From Zygnema circumcarinatum SAG 698-1b (lineage: Eukaryota; Plantae; Zygnematophyceae), in contig CM074816.1 of NCBI GenBank assembly GCA_037447605.1, positions 1,454,525 to 1,518,524 on the forward strand: a stretch of 64,000 bases of DNA. Direction: 5' to 3'. The translations under genes were made by a program, and so were the position numbers. Below the pieces are notes generated by a model. It searched no databases and had not been told where the DNA came from. It saw only the letters and a program-made list of their open reading frames with translations. Below are positions 1 through 14,649 of the stretch, piece by piece. Position 1 is the first letter of the stretch, and each line of letters starts with the position of its first letter.

Positions 1-2036
1 CAACAACAACAACATGGGACATGGAATTGTGCGCTTCATCATTGCACAAGAGCGTCTAGGAGACGGCCAAAAATGTGGGAGCGGTTGAACGGACACCTGT
101 ACGGGAAACCAATTGATGACGTCAGTATTCATGCGGAGGACCAGGACACGTGGCAGCTTTTGAACGCACCTCGACATGCAAATATAAGTCGTTGGCAGTT
201 CTACATCACTTTGCGCCTTCTCAACATATTCGTACCGTAAGGTCCTCTATGTTATTATCCCGTAGGCGGCATTACATCACGTGATGTAATGGTGAGCAAC
301 TTTGTACATCACCGTATGTAACGAGGGCTGCATGCTAAAAAAGACAGCGACTGGCCCGAGAAGGCTGGCGGAGCTCCCGAGGTGAGTCAAAAACAAATTC
401 TCTCAGCCAAAGATGACACGGCCGGAAATTTGCGCCAATGGGAGGAGCGGATTGTGGCTCGAATTTGTCTCGAAAGCAGGTTTGTCTCAAGGTCCGAAGT
501 TGCCTCAGGTCGTTCGCCTGCCCGCTCGTCGCTGATTGGTCGGAGTCCACATCAACGCTCGGCGGCCGCTAAGACAGGTGCTTTTCGGGCAGACCGTAAT
601 AACATTTTGAGCAGAAACCAAACAGACGGGCAGTCAAAGAAAAGTATTTTCGTCCAGATTGAGAAAACTGGACCGTCCGGTTGGAAAGATGTTACAGGAT
701 GAAAAGGGACCCTGTTTCTTGGGCTGTATGAAAATATTCTTGGAGAGCTGGAGGTGATGGCGGGCAGCCCGGGCAAAGCTGAAAAAAAAAGTTCGTGCCT
801 TACAGAAGGAGGGCTTGCAGGAGGCTTTTGTTGCAGGGGCGGAGCTTCAGTTGCAAGCAGTCGGCGATATTTTCAGTATATCGTGAAATATCGACTTCTG
901 AATCCTCTCATTTTTTGCGATACAGATTTTTGTTTACTGTATGCAGGCGACTGCAGCTACTTGTATGCTTCATCGGAATAATTGGAAAAACTAGGTTTTT
1001 TGGTAGAAACTGGTTTTTCAGAACCTGCAGTTGAATCAAGCTGCATGTTCGCTTCTCTTGGACGAGGAGACTGATTTGGGCTCTGAGAACAACGATTAAA
1101 TAAATGTGAGTATATCTAGTTCGCATTCGGGATTGCAAAAAGTCAATTTTTTTGATTTGGATGGCTCCAAAAAAATAGAATCTTGCACAAGCGTTCTCTT
1201 GCAAGATGAAGATTTTGGATATGCAGAAAAATGTGCGATTTGGTGTGATCTGATTCCTTCATCTTTCTGTAAATGTCCTTTTTTCTTAATGATGATGTCG
1301 CAAAGGATAGGAAAAGGATGATCTTTTCAGATGAGATTGAGTCGCAGGATATGGAATCTCGCCGTCATGATTCGTGCCTGCGCTGCAAATCGTTATGTCA
1401 GATCGCTTGGAACCTTGGAACGAGGAGGGGGGGGGAAAGTGGGAGGGGAAGGGGGAGGGGGAGGGGGAGGGGGAGGGGGAGAGAAGGTAGTGGGAGTGGA
1501 GTGGGAGGGAGAGAGAGAGGGAGTGGGGATGGGAGGGAGAGAGAGAGAGGGAGTGGGAGTGGGAATGGGAGGGAGAGAGAAATGGAGTGGGAGTGGGATG
1601 GAGAGAGAGAGGGAGTGGAAAAGGGAGGGAGAGGGAGTGGGAGGGAGAGAGAGGGAGTGGGAGTTGGAGGGAGTGAGTGAGTGGGAGCTGGAGAGGGAGC
1701 GGGAGAGGGAGCAAGAGACGGAGCAGGAGAGGGAGAGGGAGAGGGAGAGGGAGAGGGAGAGGGAGAGGGAGAGGGAGAGGGAGAGGGAGAGGGAGAGGGA
1801 GAGGGAGAGGGAGATGGATGGAGACGGAGACGGAGAAGGAGATGGAGATGGAGATGGAGATGGAGATGGAGATGGAGATATGTGTGATTAAGATTGCAAC
1901 GTGTCCAATGAGCTGTTCCTTCTTCTTTTGGGCGTTCAGTGTCTCAGTACTGCTACACTGAAAGAAGTAATGGCCAACCTTTAAAGTGAAAGATCTCTAA
2001 TTTTTCATATTTCATTCATGTTTCTCCGTGCAGCAG

Positions 2037-3460
2037 ATGGCGGACGAGGGCGGCGGCCCAATGCGGTGGGTCGGTCCGCCCCTTCGGACGGACGACGGAA
2101 AAACGTTTTACGGAGCCATAGAAAGCCTCGGCTCGAAGGAAAGATATGAAAAAGGTGGGGCGAAATCCATACCTTTCTATCTGCATCTTGTTGCTTTGTA
2201 AGGGAGAGGGGCGGAGGGGGGGGGGGGGGAGAGAGTTGGGGGGGAGAGGGAGAGGGGAGGTGGGAGAGGGAGAGGGAGTGAGGGATAGGGAGGGGGAAAG
2301 GGCGGGAGAGGGAGAGGGAAAGGGCGGGAGAGGAAAAGGGCGGGAGAGGGAGAGGGAGATGGGGAGGGAGGGGGTGGGGGAGGGGGAAAGTTAGGTAGAG
2401 GAAGGGGGTCCTCCCAATCTTATGTAAACACTGTTCCTTCATTTCGATATGCTTTCCCCACACACTGTGAGAAATTCAGCAAAAAGAAAAAGGTGATATT
2501 AAAGCTGGTTTTGCTCGTGGTTTCAGGGGAAGCTGTTTATTTGAGGCTCTCAGAATCTAGCGCTGATGTCATCATTGCAAGAATCGAAGAACTTTATGAC
2601 GACAGCAGCAACTGTAAGCGGCTCGTGGCTCAAAGGTAATATCTTTTTTTTTTTTTTTTTTTTTTTCTGTTTTCTTGACGACGCTCTTTGAAAGTCCTGT
2701 CTTGTGTTTGGATCCCAAAAATTAAAAGAAAAAAAAATAACATCTGCTTCTATGTATTCATGGAAGAACAGGAATCTCTGTACTATGCTTCAAATTAGGC
2801 CCTTTCTTAATTTTTTTGCCTTGTTCTTCTGCAGAAACTAAATTTTCACCTTTTCCTTCTGCAGGTACTAATTTTTTGTCGTTTTCTTCTACAGGTACAA
2901 CCGCCCGGAGGATTTGGACCCTAAGCCGACTAACGCAGATAAAGATGAAGTCTATCGTATCCATTCCCCATGACTAAAAATTAACCACATTAGTCCGTTT
3001 CTTGGTCAAGCCTTTCGCTTTTTTCCTTTCCGAGATTTTTTCGGATCTGGATGCCGAAAATGTTTGATCACCACTTCTTTTGTTCCATGTGAGATCTTTT
3101 CCGTTTCTGTTACACACGTAAGCGTTCTTGACATGGAACTGCAGTAACTGAAAATTTCGAAGATCGAGCAGTGGACTCCATTTCAGGAAAATGCCAAGTG
3201 CTGAAAAAAACTGATTTCTATTCACTAAAGTCTGCCGGGCGGTGAGATTTTATCGAACTTCCTTTCTCTGCACTTTTTTTTCGATCTTTTAGATTCTGAT
3301 TGCAGATCAAAATTCTGATTCTAATGTGTTAATGCGATTTTAATATTATTATTGATATTTTGATGTGACAGTGACGTGGGCCGTGACGCACACATCTACA
3401 CTTGCGAATTCTCCTATTCGTTGAAGGACAATCACTTCATACCCATCGACGAAGGCAAAG
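2037..3460 (+). other. BAH (bromo-adjacent homology) domain encoded by exons 1-5
   Basis: Spliced translation: [158 protein letters not shown] hallmarks: WxG..FY, GExVY, ARIEEL, YxRPED, EVY, IxGKCxV, CxxxY..F. Confidence 0.85.
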
Positions 3461-6400
3461 GTAGATGATACTAAAACCCCCCTCGCTCTTCATCTCTGCT
3501 CCTCCCCCAACTCTCTCTCTCCCTCCCCTCTCTCACTATAACTCTTCATCCCTCCATCTCGTTCCATCTTTCCCCTCCTACCATCTTGTTTTCTCTCTAC
3601 CTCCTCTCTCTCCCCCGCTCTCTCCCTTTCTCTCTCTCTCTCGCTCGATCTCTCTCACTCATCCCCTCCTCTCCCTCTCTCGTTGTGCCTCTCCCTCCTC
3701 CCTCTCCCCCCCCCGCCCCCCACCGCCCCTTTCCATTTTCCCCTTTTCTTTCATTACATTTTGATGGCCTCTATCATCGAAATCAATGTCAACACACCAA
3801 GCAACAACTTTGTATGGCCTTGTTGGTTCTTTGCCTTTACATTCTTCCGTTCCAAGCTGACCCTTGTAACTGATTTTTGCCTGCAGCTGCTGTGAAATTT
3901 TCGACGGATTTGGAAACTGACGCCAGTGAATCTCCGTACATAGAAAAGAGTATCTCAAGTAAAGAGCATCGCACTGTTGACGAAACAGCCACGGAGCTTC
4001 CCTCAAAATACGCACGAAAAAAGCGAAAACTGGGCAAAGATATCCAGACATTTGGAGTAGGGGTTGGTACGAGTTTGCCTATTGAAAAGGATGAGCTTGA
4101 AATTTCAAACAAACGAAAAAAGTGCCATCCAGAAGAGGATTCAGAAGAGGACAGAAGGAGATTTATCGTTCGGAATTCTGAAAGTAAGATAATGGGCTGT
4201 TATGTGGTTTTAAATGTCTTATTTGAAGGACCAAGCTCCTGTTTCCCGCTCTCCCTAACTCCAACCTCCCCCCTCTCCCAACCCCCACCCCCCTTCCCCC
4301 TCTCCCCTCCCCCCTCCTCCCTTCCCCCCNNNNNNNNNNCCTCCTCCTTCCCGCTCCCTCCTCCCCCCTCCTCCACTCCCTTTCCTCCCCCTCCCCCGCT
4401 TTCCCTCTCCCTCGCGTCTCCCTTTCCTGATTTTCAGAAATGAACTAGCACTGCTGTAACATACACATGAGAGTCCGAGTATGATTTTTTTCGAATCCCT
4501 CACTTTCCTTATGAATCCAACACAGGAAAATGTATTCACATAGATTCATCGAATCTCTTTCTTCTTCCCTTTCTTTTCTTGATTTCTTGAAGCAGAGCTT
4601 GTTGTGCACACCAAAGAGGATGCTACGTCGGCCGAGATTCTCACTCACTCCGATTCTGAAAAGAAGGCGGTGAATTTTCCGCATCCGAAGGAAGAAGCGG
4701 TGGAAAGTGAAAGTGAAACGAAGTCCACGTTTGGACCGCGAAAGAGTTTGGATTCCTTCAAAGTAGGAAGTGCCTATCAGATCGATCCGATCGAAGTTCC
4801 CAAAAATGCACCGGAGGAATTGAGACGAGCATGCGCAGTAATGGTGAGAAAAAAATTCAATTATTTTCTTTTTCGGGTCACTTGTTATGTTTTATGTGTC
4901 ATTATATGGGATACTGGAGGGAGTAATGGCTGAGTTGGGTGCTTGTTTTTTTAGTCAATTTCTTTTTATCTCGCTGATTCTCATTCTTCGCTGTTTCCTT
5001 CTCCACTCCCGCACCTTCTTATCTCGTTCTATTCTCACTCGCCTGCCCCTCCCTCTCCCTCTCTCCTTCAATTGTTTCTCTCTATCTCTTTTATCTCTGC
5101 CTCCTTTTTAACCCTTCTTGCCTCTATGTCCTCTTCCTCCTTATCTCTGTTACTTCTACACCTCTCTTTTCTCTTTCTGCATTTTATCTCGCTGTTTCTC
5201 TCCCTCTTATCTCTCTTCTCGCTCTCAATCTGTGCACTCCTTTTTCTTTTTCTATCCTCGTTCAAACTAACCCCTTCCCTCTCCGCTCTCGTATAACTCC
5301 CCCTCTCCCTCTTCATCTCTGTCTTCGTCTCTACACCCCTTATCTCTTTCTATCCTCACTCTGAATATGCTCTCTCTCTTTCTCCCTCTACCGTACATAT
5401 TCATGCAGGTTTCAAGAAAGGACAAAAGAAGCGTAGCAATCAAGTACCCAACTTCTGCCTCTATTGAGGCTTTCTTCTCCAACGGAACTGAATCCATAGA
5501 AACGAAAGAAATCGATCAATTTCACAAGCTGAGGAATCACAACGACTTAAGAAAAGCAAGCGGAGGCAAAAAAAATGGCTCTCATATTATCGCTAAAAAG
5601 GCCCTTATTGGGAACAAACCGGAGCTAGATGGATTATTTGAAATGAACATTTCCACCGCAAAGAGAATGTTAGTTCGGCAAATTTCAAGAACTGAATTCT
5701 CGCATCAAGCCCAACTGAAATGCTTTTGGGTTGCGGAACCCAAAAAGTTTTATTCAAGCAGCAGGAGTGGGAGAGAGGGAGGGAAAAGTGGGAAATGTGA
5801 ATCTGAAGATTTTGAAGGAGGAGAGAGTGATGGAGATTATAAAAAGAAGGGGCCAATTTTGAAGGGTGGTGGTTCAGCTCTGGAGAAATATAAGGATGAG
5901 TCTACAGCCATTGACGAGGAGGAGGGACAGGCTAATTCTCCTAATGGAAGTGCTGTGGAGAGAGAGAGAGAGCGGGAGAGGGAGAGAGAGGGAGACAGAG
6001 AGAGAGAAGCAGGGAAAATTGCTTTTAATGAGCAGGTTAGGCGGAAGCTTAAGAGGAAGAATTCAAAGCCGCGGAAGTCGGATGATGGTACGAACAAGGT
6101 CAGCGAGGTGGGAGAGGAAGTGAGGGTCAGTGAGAGAGAGAAAGAGAGAGAAAAGGAGAGCTTAAACGAAACTAAAACTGATGAAATGGTGTATCCTAGG
6201 GCATTGGTATTTCAAGCAGAAAAAACCCAGAAAAAAAATCAGAAAAAAGAGGTGGAGAGAGCTTTTACTGATGCTGCTGAAGTGCTTACAAAGCTTGTGG
6301 ATGAAGGAAGTCCTAAAGATTATATGCAGGAGGCGGAGGGAGGAAGCAAAAATTGTACTCTTTCTGAGATGAAATGGGCTAAGAAACGAAGGGCGAATAT

Positions 6401-9400
6401 CGGCGGTAGGGGCACACTTGTGAGAGGTGGAGGAAGTGGAATTGCAATATCGGCAGAAACTGTGCAGGAGGAGAAGATAAAAAAAAATGTTGAAAAGGAC
6501 ATTCCGAGGGTTCAAAGTAATTCCCTTTTGACTCCGATTTCTCGTTCAAGATCTGCCAAATGGACGGAAAGCAGCGAGTCAGAGAGTTTGGAGAAAGATA
6601 GTGAGCGGGATGATGGTGATGATAATGATGATGAAGATGAAGCTGAAGACGGAAATGATGATGAGAAGAAAGTGGAGAAGGAAGTGAAGGTTGAGGATGG
6701 GAGTGAGGACGGTAGTAGGAAAAGGCTGAGAAAGGCTTCTATGAAGAATGTTGTGGAAAAGACGAAAGTGAAATTGTTGCCGCTTCCGAAGGACCTTCGC
6801 AGGAGGTGGTCAAGTGACAGGTATTACTATCTCTCCCTCTTTTTACCCATGTTTTTACTCTTGATTTTTATGCTAGTTGTAGTACGGATTCTGGAATTCT
6901 GGTACGTGATACAACATGACGTGCTATGTCTGTTAAAAAACATACATCACACAAACCATCTATTCATATATTCAATAAACGATGATACTTCCTCATGTCC
7001 TATGCATGTCAAATCCGTCCCATACCCATCCATCTTCTTCCTTCCTCTTCTTCTTTCCTTCTTTCTTCTTCCTCCCTTAATTACCTTCTCCCTCCTCTCT
7101 CCTTCCCTCCCCTCACCAGTCTCCCTGCCCTTCCTTCCTCATCTCCGAGCCCCTCCTCCTTCCTCCTTTCCATCCTCCTCCTCTCTTTCCCCTTCTTCCT
7201 CCCTCTTTCCTGCTCACTCCTCTTTCCTTCCTCCCCCTTTCCTCTTTTTTTCTTCCCTTTCCTCCTCCTTTCCTTTCCTTCCTCTCATCATCTTTCGGCT
7301 CCCTCCTCCTCATTTTCTCCTCCTTCCTCTTTCCTTCCTCTCTCCTCTCAATACTCAGCTCCCCCTTCTCTTTCCCTCTCTTCCTTCCTCCGCTCTTCCT
7401 CTCCTCCTCCTTCCTCTTCCTCTCAGCCTTCCTTCTTCCCCTCCTCCCAGATATAAAGCTGCTCCAGCTGAAGCTGGTCGAGATCATGAAGGCCCGCGGC
7501 GCCCTCCCCGGGCAGCCCATCCTCCGCCCCTCTTGAGGGAGGAGGCGCGGCGGCACATCGGGGACACGGGCCTCCTCGACCACCTCCTCAAGCACATGAC
7601 CGACACGCTCGTCGCCTCGGGGGAGAGGTTCCGCCGCCGCCACAACAGCGAGGGGGCATGGAAAATGAGCCGGAGGAGGCCGGTCCATGGGACCGCGGCA
7701 GGTGAGGGAGGGAGGGAGGGTGGGGAGGGGAGGAGGGAGGGAGGGAGGTGGGGAGGGAGGGGGGGAGGGCGTGGGGGAGTAGGAGGAGGGAGGGGAGGGG
7801 GAGGGGGAGGGGGGGAGGGAGGCGGGAGGGAGGGAGGGGAGGGAGGCGGGGGGAGGGAGGGAGGGGAGGAGGAGGGGAGGGGGGGGGGGTGGGAGGGGAG
7901 GGGAGGGAGGGAGGGAGGGAGGGGAGGGAGGGAGGGGGGAGGGGGGGAGGGAGGGAGAGGGAGGGAGGGGGGGAGGGGGAGGGGGGGAGGGGAGGGGAGG
8001 AGGGGAGTGGTAGAGGGGAGGGGGGGAGGGGGGGAGGTGGGGGAGTGGAGGGAGGGGAGGGAGGGGGAGGAGAGTGGGGGAGGGAAGGGGGGAGGGAGGG
8101 GGGAGTGGAGGAGGGAGGGAGGGGGAGGGAGGGAGGGGGGGAGGGGGGGAGGAGGGAGGGAGGGGGAGGGGGAGGGGGAGGGGAGGTGCGGGAGGGAGGG
8201 AGGAGGGGGGAGGGAGGAGGGGAGGGAGTGGAGGGAGGGGGGAGGGGGAGGGGGGGGAGGGAGGGAGGGAGGGAGGGAGGGAGGTGGGAGGGGGGGAGGG
8301 GGGGAGGGAGGGAGGGAGGGCGGGAGGGGGAGGAGGGAGGGAGGGGGGAGGGAGGGGGGAGGGGGAGGGGGAGGGGGGGAGGGAGGGGGGAGGGAGGAGG
8401 GGAGGGAGAGTGGGGGAGGGAAGGGGGGAGGGAGGGGGGAGGGAGGGAGGGGAGGGAGGGGGAGTGGAGGAGGGGGGAGGGGGGAGGGGGAGGGGGAGGG
8501 AGGGGGGAGGGGGGAGGGGGAGGGGGGGAGGGAGGGAGGGAGGGAGGGAGGGGGGGAGGGAGGGAGGGGGGGGAGGGGGAGGAGGGAGGGAGGGGGGAGG
8601 GGGGGAGGGGGAGGGGGGGAGGGAGGGAGAGGAGGGGAGGAGGGGGGGAGGGAGGAGGGGGGGGGAGGGGGAGGAGGAGGAGGGAGGGCGCGGAGGGAGG
8701 GAGGGAGGGAGGGGGGAGGGAGGGGAGGGGGGGAGGGGGGGAGGGGGGAGGGAGGGGAGGGGGAGGAGGGGAGGAGAGGGGGGAGGGAAGGGGGAGGGCG
8801 GGGGAGGGAGGGGAAAGGGGGGGGAGGGAGGGGAGGGAGGGGAGGGAGTGGAGGGAAGGGAGGAGCTATCAGTTTATATTATTGGTTATTAGTCATTAAG
8901 AGGAATATCAGTCATTCGGATCGTCATTCGTAAGGGATTCTCTCCGCTCTCTCTTAATGGCTTCTCTCGTTTTTTATTCTCTCTCTCTCCCTCTCTCTCG
9001 CGCTCTCTCTCTCTCTCTCTCTCTCCTCTCTCTCGCGCTCTCTCTCTCTCTCTCTCTCCTCCCCCTCCCCCAGGCCGCCGGCATTCCGGACCCCTCGTGG
9101 GTGCCCCCCCCCGGATGGCCCCTCCCGAACGGAGCGAGCGAGGTCAGCTCATGCGAACTGAGGGACCTCCGACAGTCGCTGACGGAGCTGCAGACGTGAG
9201 CATTCTCCCTGCCTCCACTGAAAATAAAAACTAGATACTTAGAAATCAAACTAAAAAAACGAACTAAATTACGAACTTAAAACGGGGCTACATCCTCCAT
9301 TCACCTTATAGCTTTTGACGCTATGTAAATGTGTCATTATATGCATAAATGAAAATATTTTGAAGCCATGTTGTGTTTATGAAGGGAATTCTTCAGCCTA

Positions 9401-10693
9401 TGTGAGTTTGCTGCTTCCAAGAAATTAAGGGCTGACAGAGACCCAATGTTCTGTCTCGGGATGAGTGACAAGTGCTCTCTCTCTCTCACTCGCTCTCTCT
9501 TTCCCTCTCTCTCTCTTTCTCTCTCTCTCTCTTTCTTCTCTCTCTCTCTGCCCTAACCCTGCTACGCCCACACCTGCAGGGAAGTTCGGCGGCTACAGGC
9601 ACCACCCTCCAAGCGTTCCGCAGAGGCCGACTTGCTGGCCTCGTTAAGAAGCTCCCTCGCACGTGTGGAGGAGCAGCAGAAAAAGCGCTGCCAGGTAAAG
9701 AAAAAAAAATCGGAATCAACACCGAAAATAATTAACTTTTGGCTTTGCCTTGGGGACCTTTTGGGTTATTTCCTTCCTTTATATTTTTGGGGTTTTTGGG
9801 CTACTGACAGAGATTGGGTTGATTGCGGGGGTGTAGAGAGTCATGTGCAGAGAGAGAGAGACAGAGCGGGAAAGAGCGAGAGAGAGGTAGAGAGAGCGAG
9901 AGCGAGAGCGGGAGAGAGAGAGATAGAGAGAGACAGTGTTAGGAGTTAGTTCGTCAGATTCTGATCATTTATTATTCCATTCAAATAATCCGACTGGAGT
10001 TATCGTATGAAACATTGATACCTTTGTTTTTCAGTTTTTTTGTATGTAAATTTCTTAAAAAAATAGCATTTACATGTCTGAAAACTTTCCCTGTTTCCTG
10101 ATGTGGCAGACGCTCCAAAAGGAGATGACTAAAATTAGTCAAAAACTTAGTCATGTCGAAATTCAGCTGCAGCAACTGCGATCGGAATGGTCCGAATCGC
10201 AGACTCGTCAAAAGGTGCAGTTCAAGAAGCTCCCATATTGTAATTTTTTTTTATTATGCATTTGTCCCTAATTCTGTCCATTTTTCACCAACTACGCCTT
10301 TTTTAATACATACGAAGTTTTTATTGACTTTTGTTTCCTGAAATTTGGACAAATTTACGGTTCGTATTCTACTTTAACCAACTATTTTTACTTCATTGCA
10401 TTTTTTTTTCTTTCTTTTTTTCGTAAAAGTCCCATTGTACCGCTAACTTACTGCGGCGAGTGGGTGCGCATTTGCGATTATTTTTCTCATTTTTTCCCCT
10501 TTTTTGTGTCTGTTCTGATGCAGGAAAACTTGACTGCAGCTCGCCTTCAGGATCAGCAAAATTTCGCGCATTTGAAAAAGGCTGTGGAGGAGGTACGATT
10601 GAATCTCACCTTTTTATTTGAATGCTTTATTTGGCATGATTTATTGCTACCGGCTGAGCTCTCCCTCCTTTCCCCTCTCCCTCTCTCTCTCTC

Positions 10694-10738
<45 letters not shown>

Positions 10739-10743
10739 CTCTT

Positions 10744-10776
<33 letters not shown>

Positions 10777-13480
10777 GCCTCTCTCTCTCTCTCCCTCTCT
10801 CCCGTGCAGATGAAGAGCGAGACGAAGAGCCTTCAAGGAGAGGGAGAAGCACGACTTCAGGACCTCCTCGCCGCCCTCTCCAGGTCAGGAAAAAAAAAAT
10901 TCAAATTCTTCCCTGAAGAACTATTCAAAAGTAGAGGTCAAGAAAGAAAAGGAGGACAACGGTTTATTATATACGAAAGATTGAAAATGTTTTGGGATTA
11001 TTTTTCTTTTGCAGCTTTCGCTCGGACGTTATGGAAAGATTCAGCAAAATGGAATTTGAAATTGCGACCTTTGCCGAGGTTTGCATCCCGAGCTGATTTT
11101 CAAATTAGCTTCTATCGATCCATAAATGAAGAAAGGGAGAGAGATATGAAATCAAAAGAAAAAGAAGAAATCGATAAAACTGAACTGTTCTACTATATGA
11201 AATTTCAAATTGAGGCGAAATAGAGGAATTTTATTTTATGATTTATTTATTTTTTTGCGAGCAGGAGGACGCTGGGCGGCTCGAGGCGCTCGTGGCGGAG
11301 AGGCATCGAATCGACACCGAACTGAGGGAGGTGGCGGCGGTCATGCGCTTCCTGCAGGTGGGAGGGAGGGAGGGAGGGAGGGGAGGGAGGGAGGGAGGGA
11401 GGGAGGGGAAGGGGAGGGGAGGGGGAGGGAGGGAGGGGGAGGAGGAGGGAGGGGAGGGAGGGAGGGGAGGGAGGGAGGGGGAGGGAGGGGAGGGGAGGGG
11501 GAGGGGGGAGGGAGGGAGGGGGAGGGGGGAGGGAGGGGAGGGGAGGGGGGAGGGAGTGGGGGAGGGAGGGAGGGGGGGAGGGAGGGAGGGAGGGAGGGGG
11601 GAGGGGGAGGGGGAGGGGGGAGGGGGAGGGGGAGGGGGAGGGGGAGGGCTGGGATTGGAGAGGGAGAGGAGAGGACGAGTTCAGGGGGCCGAGGGGCGAA
11701 GGGGAGAGGGGGAGAAGGGAACGAGGGGGGGGAGGTGGAGAAATAGGGAGAGGAGGCGAGAGAGAGAGGAGGGAAAGCTAAAGGTTCAGTTTTTTCAAAG
11801 CTCAAAATTCGGCTGTTCTTGTCAACTTCCATTATTTCTTATTTATTTCGCTTCCTTGTTTTTTTTCAGTCCATTTTTTTGTGAACTTCTTCTGTTTTGC
11901 AGGTCGACATCGGCAAAATGAATGAATTCGCACTAAATAACAATAACAATAATTCCACCATAACGAATAGCGGTACGGTCGGAGCTTCATTGGCTCCTCC
12001 AAGTCCGCCTCAACCCGAAAGTGAAGGCATGAAGGAGGCTATCACCGAAACCACTAGGAATGCGGAGGTGGCTAAAAAAGAGTTAACCACGACTTTCACT
12101 AATACGACTACCACTGAACATCCCACCAATTCTACCTGTACGTTTGCCCGTCCTGAGAGGCAGTGGGGTAATAGTAATACCTTCGTGGAGACATCTATTG
12201 GAGGAGCTTCTCCTACTCCCTCCCTCCCACCTCCCACTAACTCTACTACCACTACCCCTACCACTGTTTCAGCTAAGGAAGAGGAAGCTTCGGCGAAGAC
12301 TACTACCACTGAGAAGACCTCTATTTTGGCTCCATCGCCACCAATCAGATCCCTTGAAACTCGAAATTCTCTTTTCTCCTCTCCCTTGCATATTGAGTCT
12401 TTCGCCGGAGGAGTTGTACCTCAAGCAAAAGCTCTCTCTCTACCGGACCTTCACTCTCTTCAGAGAAGGTTTCTTCAGAGCCAAGAAGTAGAGGCCCATA
12501 GAGATTTCCAATACCTTCTAGAAGCTTCTTCTTTCCCATACTCTCAGCCTCTTAATATTTCCCATTTACAAGATTTGGCTTTTACCCTACAGGCGGGTGT
12601 TCAACAGCAGCAATTTAGGCCCTCAAATTTCCCTATGACAATTTCTGCTCTCCATCAGCTTATGTCTCAACAAGTAAATTGGAAGGCAGCTACCCCAGAG
12701 CAAGGATCTGCCTTTGAAACTAGCCCGAAAAATAATTACAATGTTGGGCCGAAGCAGATGCTTAAATCTTCATCGAGCCCCACCTTCACTCCAAGTATTA
12801 CGAAGGCTCCCTCGGAACCCTCTATTTTGAGCAAGAGAGGGGGAAAGGGAGAGGGAGAAGGAGTGGGAGAGGGAGTGGGAGAGGGAGTGGGAGAGGGTGT
12901 GGGAGAGGGAGAGGGAGGGAGAGTGAGGCGGCTAGGAACAAGCCTCTCGTTTCCGGGAACTGGAAATCTTGGAAACTTGAGAAATTTGGGAAATTCGAGT
13001 CCTCTCCACTACGACCAGAGTCGTCCTTCTAAGAATTCGAAAAACTCGACTTTTTTTTCTGAACGAGTGGTTTCCGATCAGGGAGTGAAAGGACCTCTTT
13101 CCCAGCGGCTTACAAGGGAAGGGAATGCTGAAATTTTTCACAATGGGGCAGGAAATCGCAGTGTGCAGGAAATGGCGGTACCCTGCCAGAGAAATTTGCA
13201 GCCTGCCCGGAAAAGTTTTCAGAGTTTAGGGGAGGTTGTGGGAGGAGTGCAAATTCCGGCGAATTCTGTACGGGCAGCTGCCCGTAAAGAGGTGAAGAAT
13301 GAGTCGAAGAGAAGTGGAATTCGTGGGAAGGGAGAGGGAGAGGGAGTGGGAGAGGGAGAGGGAGAGGGGACAGCGGTAACATCATCTTGGCTTGCTCTAC
13401 ATACTCCCGGGAATGGTAGTGAGAAGGGAGAGAAGCCACAAAGGAGCCTGCAGACGAAAGGAAATCCACCTCTGAGTTGA
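2037..13480 (+). CDS. SWI1: BAH-domain + SWITCH1/DYAD/AMEIOTIC1-family protein, 17 exons, ~1,630 aa. Exons: 2037-2154, 2527-2635, 2895-2956, 3145-3241, 3372-3460, 3887-4183, 4596-4843, 5409-6820, 7451-7701, 9074-9195, 9580-9694, 10110-10214, 10524-10592, 10810-10883, 11015-11078, 11265-11357, 11903-13480
   Basis: All 16 introns are GT-AG and junction phases match, except that exon 9 has local indels (extra base near 7465, missing base near 7530, garbled 7655-7700). SWI1/AM1 motifs: [51 protein letters not shown]......[72 protein letters not shown], then coiled-coil exons and a long disordered last exon. Confidence 0.85.
7702..8865 (+). repeat. ~1.15-kb almost pure G/A low-complexity tract in intron 9 (G-quadruplex/H-DNA prone)
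   Basis: GGGAGG/GGAGGG-type repeats directly after the donor at 7702. Similar tracts occur in many introns, e.g. 11358-11760, 16260-16870, 31050-31880. Confidence 0.9.
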
Positions 13481-14649
13481 TCCTATTCCACACTTGTGAC
13501 TTGATCCCGTTCCACGTCAGTTGATGCGATGGTCCTCATCTGAAACTGCATCTGTTTTTCTCGATATATGGAACAAAGGAATCTCTTTAGAAGAGTTTTG
13601 TTGTGTTTCTTCTCTAGAGAAGTGGGTTTTAGAGACCAGCTAGTTTGTTGGTTGTGAATAGAATGATCACATCATTTGAACACATGGCAGGCATCACATC
13701 ATTTCACAGCTATGACGTGCTGCTTCTGGAAGGAGCGGGTGAAGGTCCTAGGCTTCAGTGTATCTTGTCGTTTTGCAGTGTGGGTTTTTAGGTGTTTAGG
13801 GCATCTGGGGTTCAGCAAAGCTGAAACTCTCACGTTTTGTAAAGTTTCATAGGTTCCGAAGGGGACTGCTGTACGGTACTAGTCTCAAACCTCGAACCTC
13901 TCACATCCTCGGGTGATGATTTGAAGTGTTTTTTTTTTCCGAACATGAGAAGGGGGCAGAAGGGACTACAGTTCTTTGCCGGTTTAGGTGTTGTGCATGT
14001 GCCTTAGGTAGATATGGAATGGCTTGGATTGGACGCATGCTATTGGGAATGAATTTCAAAACCTCACCCAAATCGACAGTGGATGGGCATCAACCATTTC
14101 ATGCACTGTGTAGCATGGCCTGGCATGGCATGATAGATGGTGATGTTTGGATGGATGCACGGATGGATGTGTGCATGTGCATGCATGCATGCACAAATGG
14201 TGTTTCTGCATCTCTCTCATAGAACTTGCTCACGTTCCCCATTTCTTTATTTCTCGTTGCTCCAAAGGGACTATCCGTCTGTTCCTTTCAAGACCTGGTC
14301 ATGAATTTGGCTTTAGTCCACAGCACACTTGTGAAGTTGTTTCAAAAAGAGCACGAGCTCCCTTTGTTAATTCCAACACATCCCTAATAACCCTAAAACC
14401 CTCCTAACCCTAAACCCTAAACCCTAAAGCCTACAAACCTCGTCAAAATCTTTTATTTCGAAGCAAATGCCCTTGCCTTCTGCTCTCTCGATCACTTCCT
14501 TCCTCTTGTCGCGGTCAACCTAAAACTGGTCGCCATAGAAGCCCTCACCTGCCTTAATCTTCTTCTTTTTATTACCCTCCCTCCTCCCATCACTAATTTC
14601 CCCATCCTCCAAAATTCCTTTCCTTTTTTTTTTTTTCCCCACCTCCCTT

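What the first reader, a model, noticed from the sequence alone, without database searches (positions are those of the whole stretch)
2037..13480. BAH chromatin domain fused in frame to a SWITCH1/DYAD/AMEIOTIC1 meiotic regulator
Seen: exons 1-5 encode a complete BAH fold and splice in phase (3460/3887, 4183/4596, 4843/5409) into both conserved SWI1/AM1 blocks. I found no in-frame ATG that could start SWI1 independently; the frames upstream of exons 6 and 7 are closed by nearby stops. Established: plant SWI1/AM1 proteins control entry into meiosis and protect meiotic cohesin from WAPL, and the land-plant members I know have no BAH domain. Inference: this lineage may tether the cohesin-protection/meiotic switch directly to chromatin, a domain architecture I have not seen described.
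Basis: partly seen in the sequence, partly recalled or inferred. Interest (0 to 1): 0.85.

Follow-up and report, generated by a model that had tools for sequence, protein, structure and literature searches.

The report
Ancestral BAH-carrying SWI1/AM1 meiosis gene
This green alga really does express one spliced gene joining a BAH chromatin-type domain to the plant meiotic regulator SWI1/DYAD/AM1, but public protein sets from other algae, a liverwort, ferns and conifers show the same layout, so it is the old form of the family, not an invention of this lineage.

Summary
RNA-derived contigs from three runs carry GT..AG junctions 2154/2527, 2956/3145, 3241/3372, 3460/3887, 4183/4596 and 4843/5409. 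One contig links BAH exons 4-5 to the first SWI1/AM1 block. Exons 1-8 give an open 810-residue frame from the ATG at 2037. The N gap (4330-4339) lies in a spliced-out intron.

The assembly breaks the second conserved block (exon 9, 7451-7701) with frame shifts. RNA contigs repair the first two and change the third site, so these are assembly errors, not a pseudogene.

BAH (PF01426) and the SWI1/AM1 winged-helix block (PF25874) already sit in one predicted protein in:
- Chlorella, Micractinium, Elliptochloris and Parachlorella
- Chara and Closterium
- a lycophyte, ferns, Cryptomeria and Taxus

A liverwort has BAH exons directly upstream, annotated as a separate gene. A moss and Amborella have none within 10 kb upstream.

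In this alga the three methyl-lysine cage residues and the two specificity residues are all replaced (I-R-N, N-E), so canonical histone-mark reading is unlikely here.

No paper I could search discusses BAH in this family. The scan has noted this stretch only as this same finding.

The parts
2037..2154 (+). Exon 1: start ATG, N-terminal W-V-G-P-P motif, start of BAH
   Evidence: First ATG after an in-frame stop. Joint 2154/2527 in an X7 RNA contig. The W[VIL]GxP motif is shared with Closterium, fern and chlorophyte orthologues.
2527..2635 (+). Exon 2: BAH strands. Cage position 1 is Ile. Ends with the first two bases of the Arg codon that replaces the cage Trp.
   Evidence: tblastn to Cryptomeria BAH. 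Cage table. No base differences in RNA contigs.
2895..2956 (+). Exon 3: BAH 'R-Y-N-R-P-E-D-L' core (orthologues have W-Y-Y-R-P)
   Evidence: GT..AG. Joint 2956/3145 in X7. Alignment.
3145..3241 (+). Exon 4: BAH middle
   Evidence: tblastn to Chara BAH. Joints 2956/3145 and 3241/3372.
3372..3460 (+). Exon 5: end of BAH
   Evidence: tblastn to Chara and Closterium BAH. Joint 3460/3887 in X6 and X7 RNA contigs.
3887..4183 (+). Exon 6: basic, acidic linker with no in-frame ATG
   Evidence: Joints on both sides in RNA contigs.
4184..4595 (+). Intron 6: CT-rich, contains the assembly gap 4330-4339
   Evidence: Spliced out (GT..AG, skips 412) in X6, X7 and X10.
4596..4843 (+). Exon 7: linker plus the start of the first SWI1/AM1 conserved block (G-S-A-Y-Q-I-D...P-K-N-A-P)
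   Evidence: Alignment to AM1, DYAD and algal orthologues. Joints.
5409..6820 (+). Exon 8: rest of the first conserved block, a long low-complexity acidic/basic insert, then '[12 protein letters not shown]' which opens block 2
   Evidence: RNA contigs cover it.
7451..7701 (+). Exon 9: second conserved block (PF25874-type winged helix; ...QLKLVEIMK...ILRP / [22 protein letters not shown]...RRRHNSEGA). The assembly has indel errors at 7451-7463, 7526 and 7657-7668. Its 3' end is uncertain.
   Evidence: 240 hits, all PF25874. (frame 3 -> 1 -> 3 against every orthologue). (RNA contigs carry the indels; DNA short-read depth 0 at 7536-7705).
7702..9073 (+). Intron 9: about 1.15 kb of (GGGA)n-type G-rich repeat, then a CT repeat
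   Evidence: GC 0.76-0.78, GC skew up to 0.99.
9074..9195 (+). Exon 10: '[15 protein letters not shown]' motif that follows the winged helix in all family members
   Evidence: tblastn to Closterium, Cryptomeria and Physcomitrium. GT..AG. Not covered by the reads laid.
9580..11357 (+). Exons 11-16 (9580-9694, 10110-10214, 10524-10592, 10810-10883, 11015-11078, 11265-11357): heptad-like, charged region, probably the coiled coil. Predicted only.
   Evidence: All GT..AG and in phase, giving one open frame with exons 10 and 17. No RNA check.
11903..13480 (+). Exon 17: 525-residue low-complexity C-terminal tail and stop TGA at 13478-13480
   Evidence: No Pfam match.

Best explanation
The locus is this green alga's orthologue of the plant SWI1/DYAD/AMEIOTIC1 family, in the family's ancestral architecture. 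It is a 17-exon gene for roughly 1,630 residues with these parts, in order:
- an N-terminal BAH domain
- a linker
- the N block that in Arabidopsis SWI1 lies in the PDS5-binding first 300 residues
- the winged-helix block plus the PPPGW motif
- a probable coiled coil
- a long disordered tail

Shown here: it is transcribed and spliced as one unit. The apparent frame shifts in the winged-helix exon are assembly errors. The same BAH-first layout occurs from chlorophytes to gymnosperms.

Inferred: like Arabidopsis SWI1, it binds PDS5 through the N block and displaces WAPL, protecting meiotic cohesin and supporting meiotic entry. The BAH domain adds a chromatin or protein contact. In most lineages that contact could be a methyl-lysine cage (Y/F-W-Y). 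In this alga, where the cage is I-R-N, it would have to be a cage-independent surface (nucleosome or partner binding, as known for other BAH domains), or the domain is under relaxed constraint.
For: - Spliced RNA contigs join the BAH exons to the SWI1 exons.
- Exons 1-8 give an open 810-residue frame and exons 10-17 an open 739-residue frame.
- The full-length family BAH profile match is E=5e-32.
- The N block aligns to AM1 and DYAD.
- Block 2 gives 240 DYAD/AM1 hits, all PF25874.
- BAH + PF25874 occur in one protein in at least 11 named species of chlorophytes, charophytes, lycophyte, ferns and gymnosperms, and in adjacent split models in a liverwort.
- The pre-BAH W[VIL]GxP motif is shared across chlorophytes and streptophytes.
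- RNA contigs restore the frame at 7451-7463 and 7526, with no base substitutions elsewhere.
- SWI1 residues 1-300 bind PDS5 and displace WAPL (PMC6465247).
Against: - No functional data exist for any BAH-bearing member.
- The RNA runs are coded, so whether expression is meiotic or zygotic is unknown.
- The 3' end of exon 9 and its phase into exon 10 cannot be read from this assembly.
- Junctions of exons 10-17 are predicted only.
- The Pfam BAH model itself could not be run on the spliced protein, because it has no reference. The BAH call rests on a profile of orthologues that each pass Pfam BAH.
- The cage residues are lost here, so the BAH contribution in this species is the weakest step.
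Confidence: 0.85

Rival explanations
1. This is a lineage-specific new fusion: a BAH gene was captured by SWI1 in this alga, creating a novel chromatin-tethered cohesin protector.
For: Functionally studied SWI1/AM1 proteins (Arabidopsis, maize, rice) have no BAH. No searchable paper mentions one.
Against: The same N-terminal BAH, with the same pre-BAH motif, occurs in orthologues of chlorophytes, Chara, Closterium, a liverwort locus, a lycophyte, ferns and gymnosperms.
Confidence: 0.02
2. It is a decaying pseudogene: the frame shifts and the in-frame TGA in the winged-helix exon are real, and the degenerate BAH cage is part of the same decay.
For: The assembly shows at least two frame shifts and a stop at 7534-7536. 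All five reader positions of BAH are substituted.
Against: RNA contigs from three runs carry the frame-restoring indels, have no base substitutions over more than 4 kb of exons, and are correctly spliced. All other exons are open. The short-read DNA run has no coverage at 7536-7705, so that stretch could not be checked against it. The errors sit in a 76% GC stretch beside a (GGGA)n repeat.
Confidence: 0.04
3. These are two neighbouring genes (a stand-alone BAH gene and a SWI1 gene), joined only by read-through or a chimeric contig.
For: Contigs cannot prove a single full-length molecule. A liverwort annotation does split the locus into two genes. One X7 contig retains intron 4 (3212-3400).
Against: The 3460/3887 joint is a GT..AG splice in two runs, at the same depth as the flanking exons. 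Exons 6-7 have no start codon and closed upstream frames. An independent start would delete the first conserved block. In the liverwort, the upstream 'gene' also contains the SWI1 N block, so that split is an annotation artefact.
Confidence: 0.04

Closest known systems
BAH-bearing SWI1/AM1 orthologues in public protein sets: Cryptomeria japonica 'AMEIOTIC 1 homolog isoform X1' (P0016), Chara braunii CBR_g32476 (P0022), Closterium sp. NIES-65 (P0008), Chlorella variabilis E1ZA70 (P0199)
   Same: Same order of parts: the pre-BAH W[VIL]GxP motif (seen in Closterium and Chlorella; no match in Cryptomeria, and not searched in Chara), an N-terminal BAH, the SWI1 N block and the PF25874 winged helix; the PPPGW motif follows in Cryptomeria and Closterium but is not apparent in Chara and was not checked in Chlorella.
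   Different: The window protein lacks the conserved middle motif (L..LL.vE...P......W...R..W) found in Chara, the liverwort, the lycophyte, ferns and gymnosperms. It has long low-complexity inserts (exons 8 and 17). Its BAH has I-R-N-N-E where the other streptophyte orthologues except Chara have Y/F-W-Y-Y-D; Chara also has R in place of W.
Arabidopsis SWI1/DYAD, maize and rice AM1 (WAPL antagonist and meiotic entry factor)
   Same: The N block (within the PDS5-binding 1-300 of SWI1), the winged-helix block with [13 protein letters not shown]...RRRHN, the PPPGW motif and a downstream charged or coiled region (PMC6465247).
   Different: The angiosperm proteins have no BAH, and there is none within 10 kb upstream of Amborella DYAD. 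They are 640-800 residues against about 1,630 here.
Solved BAH domains: polybromo-1 BAH1 (closest), then EBS, SHL, BAHCC1
   Same: BAH domains by sequence. The Cryptomeria orthologue's BAH matches polybromo-1 BAH1 at 1e-17, EBS at 1e-11 and SHL at 2e-10, and keeps the Y-W-Y cage of EBS/SHL.
   Different: No family member has the His that EBS, SHL and AIPP3 use for H3P30 (Tyr in most streptophyte members, Asn in the window, Glu/Asp in most chlorophytes). The window protein also lacks the cage and the Asp (PMC6013494, PMC7718874).

Membership tests
SWI1/DYAD/AMEIOTIC1 family (PF25874 WHD_plant_repro proteins) | Winged-helix block: RWS.ERY...IM...[27 protein letters not shown]...RFRRRHN..GAMEYW | tested here: met
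   240 hits at E<=1e-3, all carrying PF25874, 85-90% identity to algal, bryophyte and gymnosperm members; aligned to every orthologue, but across two frame changes that RNA contigs repair. Pfam on the 55-residue fragment alone gave nothing.
SWI1/DYAD/AMEIOTIC1 family (PF25874 WHD_plant_repro proteins) | N-terminal conserved block (Y-E-I-D..LP...P..L...V.V......V...(Y/F)PS...L..(F)...P.LD..F.M......L.R.......FW) | tested here: met
   BLASTP to maize AM1 1e-9, Amborella DYAD 2e-10, Nymphaea, Cannabis, Cryptomeria, Chara, Adiantum. The block spans the RNA-confirmed 4843/5409 junction.
SWI1/DYAD/AMEIOTIC1 family (PF25874 WHD_plant_repro proteins) | PPPGW motif and coiled coil after the winged helix | tested here: inconclusive
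   The PPPGW exon aligns. The coiled coil was inferred by eye from the charged heptad-like exons 11-16; no predictor was run.
SWI1/DYAD/AMEIOTIC1 family (PF25874 WHD_plant_repro proteins) | PDS5 binding, WAPL displacement, meiotic expression | not testable with these tools
   Known only for Arabidopsis SWI1 and maize/rice AM1 (PMC6465247). The runs here are coded, so tissue and stage are unknown.
BAH domain (PF01426) | Full-length match to a BAH profile | tested here: met
   A profile of nine orthologous BAH domains built without the window matches spliced residues 9-160 (profile positions 2-152) at E=5e-32. Six of the eight orthologues scanned pass Pfam BAH above its cut-off. The Pfam model itself was not run on the spliced protein, because it has no reference.
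BAH domain (PF01426) | BAH beta-barrel fold | not tested
   No structure was predicted: the spliced sequence cannot be given by reference.
Methyl-lysine / H3K27me3-reading BAH (EBS, SHL, AIPP3 type) | Aromatic cage Tyr-Trp-Tyr (SHL Y41/W63/Y65; AIPP3 Y149/W170/Y172) | tested here: not met
   The window has Ile, Arg, Asn at these columns. Streptophyte orthologues other than Chara have Y/F, W, Y (apart from Thr at the first position in the partial Taxus model), and Chara has R at the W position. The Arg codon spans the exon 2/3 junction, and RNA contigs show no differing letters.
Methyl-lysine / H3K27me3-reading BAH (EBS, SHL, AIPP3 type) | His and Asp that recognise H3P30 (SHL H88/D90; AIPP3 H198/D200) | tested here: not met
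   The window has Asn and Glu. The other streptophyte members have Tyr and Asp, so no member has the His (criteria from PMC7718874).

The most novel reading that the evidence does not exclude
The plant WAPL antagonist and meiotic-entry factor SWI1/DYAD/AM1 began as a BAH chromatin reader. The Y/F-W-Y cage is kept in Closterium, a lycophyte, ferns and gymnosperms and in about half of the chlorophyte members scored, and it would direct cohesin protection to a methylated histone mark. This tether was lost at least twice (mosses, angiosperms) and has degenerated in this alga and in Chara. If so, the function was either taken over by PDS5-dependent recruitment or is dispensable. None of my literature searches found this discussed.
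Probability: 0.3. Interest if true: 0.6.

Novelty: new member of a known kind. Interest (0 to 1): 0.4.

Why it matters
All functional work on SWI1/DYAD/AM1 comes from flowering plants, whose proteins lack the BAH domain. The key paper knew of homologues only as far back as moss (PMC6465247). The data here show two things:
- The family reaches back to chlorophyte algae.
- Its original form carried an N-terminal BAH domain, with an intact aromatic cage in many lineages.

This offers plant meiosis researchers a testable idea: chromatin-mark-guided cohesin protection in non-flowering plants, and its loss in mosses and angiosperms.

For this window specifically, the gene is an ordinary, somewhat divergent member. 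The practical lesson is that its GC-rich exon 9 is mis-assembled.

Tried and rejected
- a word search with exon 8 (1220-residue open frame, region 47-517) found nothing. Exon 8 is mostly lineage-specific low complexity, and the window's own protein is not in the collection at that length.
- Pfam on single-exon pieces gave no family, because the fragments are too short.
- the Physcomitrium protein is not on record for a locus look-up.
- the conserved middle motif of the Chara, fern, lycophyte and gymnosperm orthologues scanned matches no Pfam family.
- I did not run Pfam, structure prediction or fold search on the window's spliced BAH.
- I could not resolve the 3' end of exon 9. The only contig reaching it (X10 record 6) stops aligning at 7685 with 167 unaligned letters, and the read-laying tool was capped at one call. 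With the X10 indels the frame reads ...[17 protein letters not shown] and reaches the 7701 donor in phase 2. Exon 10 needs phase 0, so at least one more assembly error is likely in 7686-7701.
- Pseudogene, two-gene and lineage-specific-fusion readings were considered and rejected (see rivals).
- The organism could not be named, because run and species labels are coded. The closest winged-helix matches, at 88-90% identity, are Chara, Closterium, mosses, Nymphaea and a fern.
Full report
**What is in the sequence**

The + strand between 2037 and 13480 holds a multi-exon eukaryotic gene. Its introns are full of CT- or GA-rich low-complexity sequence. Junctions 3460/3887 (phase 1), 4183/4596 (phase 1) and 4843/5409 (phase 0) are GT..AG and in phase. 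The frames carrying exons 6 and 7 open only 13 nt before each acceptor. They contain no ATG until the last codon of exon 7. The ATG at 2037 is the first after an in-frame stop. The N gap at 4330-4339 lies in the CT-rich intron 4184-4595.

**RNA evidence**

Twenty-four public runs of the same organism were listed. Eighteen of them hold 5% or more of the sampled words. Several hold a share (0.35-0.44) that fits the exonic fraction of the query. I laid three of these (X6, X7, X10) and one DNA run (X5) on 1881-7705.

- The RNA-like contigs show GT..AG joints at 2154/2527, 2956/3145, 3241/3372, 3460/3887, 4183/4596 and 4843/5409.
- A single 1309-nt contig (X6 record 15) runs from BAH exon 4 through exon 6 (3885-4183) and exon 7 (4596-4842) into exon 8 (5408-5949). 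The same contig carries the 3241/3372 and 3460/3887 joints around exon 5. It therefore links the BAH domain to the first SWI1/AM1 block.
- The gap-bearing intron is spliced out in all three runs.
- With these junctions, exons 1-8 translate into 810 residues without a stop.

So the BAH exons and the SWI1 exons belong to one spliced transcript.

The second conserved block (exon 9, 7451-7701; 76% GC; beside a 1.15-kb (GGGA)n intron) is not in one frame in the assembly. Every orthologue aligns to it in frame 3, then 1, then 3. There is a TGA at 7534-7536, and the alignment is lost after 7658.

The RNA contigs differ from the assembly exactly at these places:

| Place | Difference in RNA contigs | Runs |
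|---|---|---|
| 7451-7463 | 12 letters where the assembly has 13 | 3 |
| after 7526 | +C | 3 |
| after 7657 | +G | X10 only |
| after 7662 | +G | X10 only |
| 7668 | -1 | X10 only |

The first two changes restore ...[14 protein letters not shown]...[27 protein letters not shown].... No base substitutions were reported anywhere else. The short-read DNA run has zero depth at 7536-7705.

These are therefore assembly indel errors in a stretch where the one short-read DNA run laid has no coverage, not a pseudogene. The last ~16 nt of exon 9 and its phase into exon 10 remain unresolved. Exons 10-17 (9074-13480) are all GT..AG, in phase, and give one 739-residue open frame. I could not check them against RNA. 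The whole protein is about 1,630 residues.

**What the parts are**

- Block 2 (7536-7700) finds 240 proteins. All carry PF25874 (PTC1-like winged helix). They are named DYAD or AMEIOTIC 1 where named, with 85-90% identity to algal, bryophyte and gymnosperm members.
- The N block across the 4843/5409 junction aligns to maize AM1 (1e-9), Amborella DYAD (2e-10), Nymphaea, Cryptomeria, Chara and Adiantum.
- Exon 10 carries the family's AAG(I/V).DP.W.PPPGW motif.
- A BAH profile built from nine orthologues, leaving the window out, matches spliced residues 9-160 over the whole profile at E=5e-32. Six of the eight orthologues scanned pass Pfam BAH.

Both domains and both SWI1/AM1 blocks are real.

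**Is the architecture new?**

It is not. In one search the precomputed Pfam column shows PF01426 (BAH) together with PF25874 in proteins of Closterium sp. NIES-65, Chara braunii, Diphasiastrum, two Adiantum species, Ceratopteris, Cryptomeria (named 'AMEIOTIC 1 homolog isoform X1'), Taxus and the chlorophyte Parachlorella. I confirmed N-terminal BAH domains in six of them.

An exhaustive profile search of 1.84 billion representatives, scanned locally for BAH, added more. These are Chlorella variabilis E1ZA70, Micractinium tetrahymenae, Elliptochloris bilobata and several metagenomic algae. A short W[VIL]GxP motif just before the BAH domain is shared by the window, Closterium, ferns and chlorophytes. 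This argues for one origin.

I also looked at loci where the protein model lacks BAH:

- Amborella DYAD: no BAH-coding sequence within 10 kb upstream.
- The moss Ceratodon: none within 10 kb upstream.
- The liverwort Calypogeia: BAH exons, the middle motif and the SWI1 N block lie directly upstream on the same strand. They are annotated as a separate 478-residue 'BAH' gene, which is an annotation split.

BAH-first is therefore the ancestral layout of the family in green plants. It was lost at least in mosses and in angiosperms.

**Literature**

Five full-text searches and reads found no paper that mentions a BAH domain in SWI1/DYAD/AM1. Yang et al. 2019 (PMC6465247) note homologues only down to moss. 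They map PDS5 binding to SWI1 residues 1-300. So the architecture is in databases but, as far as I could search, has not been discussed.

**How the BAH might work**

The closest solved BAH domains to the family are polybromo-1 BAH1 (1e-17), then EBS, SHL and BAHCC1. H3K27me3-reading BAH domains are defined by a Tyr-Trp-Tyr cage plus a His and an Asp that read H3P30 (PMC6013494, PMC7718874). I aligned 24 family BAH domains, with these results at the cage (three positions) and the His/Asp positions:

| Group | Cage | His / Asp positions |
|---|---|---|
| Closterium, lycophyte, ferns, gymnosperms | Y/F-W-Y | Tyr (not His), Asp |
| Chlorophytes | Y/F-W-Y in about half (Asn or Ser at the third position, or gaps, in others) | acidic residue, mostly Ala (variable) |
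| Chara | ?-R-Y (W replaced by R) | Tyr, Asp |
| This window | I-R-N | N, E |

In the window all five positions are changed. The Arg codon spans the exon 2/3 junction, and the RNA contigs show no differing letters.

Many members could therefore be methyl-lysine readers, though not of the EBS/SHL H3K27me3 type. This alga's BAH cannot use a canonical cage. A cage-independent contact or relaxed constraint is more likely. The window protein also lacks a conserved middle motif that the Chara, liverwort, lycophyte, fern and gymnosperm proteins have. That motif matches no Pfam family.

**Most likely mechanism**

Shown: one expressed BAH-SWI1/AM1 gene, in the ancestral architecture.

Inferred from Arabidopsis: the N block binds PDS5 and displaces WAPL to protect meiotic cohesin. 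The winged helix and coiled coil serve the still undefined meiotic-entry role.

Speculative: the BAH domain adds a chromatin or partner contact.

**Verdict**

This is a new member of a known, already annotated kind. The wider point, that angiosperm SWI1/AM1 are BAH-less derivatives of an ancient BAH protein, is of moderate interest and appears unpublished. Earlier notes of this scan call the organism a probable streptophyte alga. That fits the closest matches here but was not tested further.

Noticed in passing
window 7451-7701: The assembly has several 1-nt indel errors in a 76% GC exon next to a (GGGA)n repeat. RNA contigs disagree with it and the short-read DNA run has zero depth there. Gene models in GC-rich stretches of this genome may carry false frame shifts.
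   Followed up: yes
window 7702-8850 and 11358-11660: Two introns of the same gene consist of long, nearly pure (GGGA)n/(GGGGA)n runs on the coding strand (GC skew up to 0.99). These are strong G-quadruplex-forming sequence. Other introns are the CT-rich complement type.
   Followed up: no
window 3441-3830 and 5001-5390: CT-rich intron stretches attract very deep contigs (word depth 40-170) with non-canonical 'joints' in both RNA and DNA runs. They are members of a dispersed low-complexity repeat, not alternative splicing of this gene.
   Followed up: partly
window 14385-14430: A short interstitial run of telomere-like CCCTAAA units lies about 0.9 kb downstream of the stop codon.
   Followed up: no
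L003:3788-14275 (Calypogeia fissa, GCA_965154635.1): The liverwort BAH-SWI1 locus is annotated as two adjacent same-strand genes: a 478-residue BAH protein that also contains the SWI1 N block, and a 1030-residue PF25874 protein. This is probably one gene split by the annotation.
   Followed up: partly
P0016:160-260, P0017:210-270, P0022:125-200; L003:7189-7909: A conserved motif between BAH and the SWI1 N block (L..LL.vE...P......W...R..W......a......l..LE) is present in Chara, the liverwort, the lycophyte, ferns and gymnosperms. It is absent from the window and was not seen in the Closterium N-terminal sequence read. It matches no Pfam family.
   Followed up: partly
window 3212-3400: One X7 RNA contig runs unspliced through intron 4 (3242-3371), so there is some intron retention or pre-mRNA in that run.
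   Followed up: no
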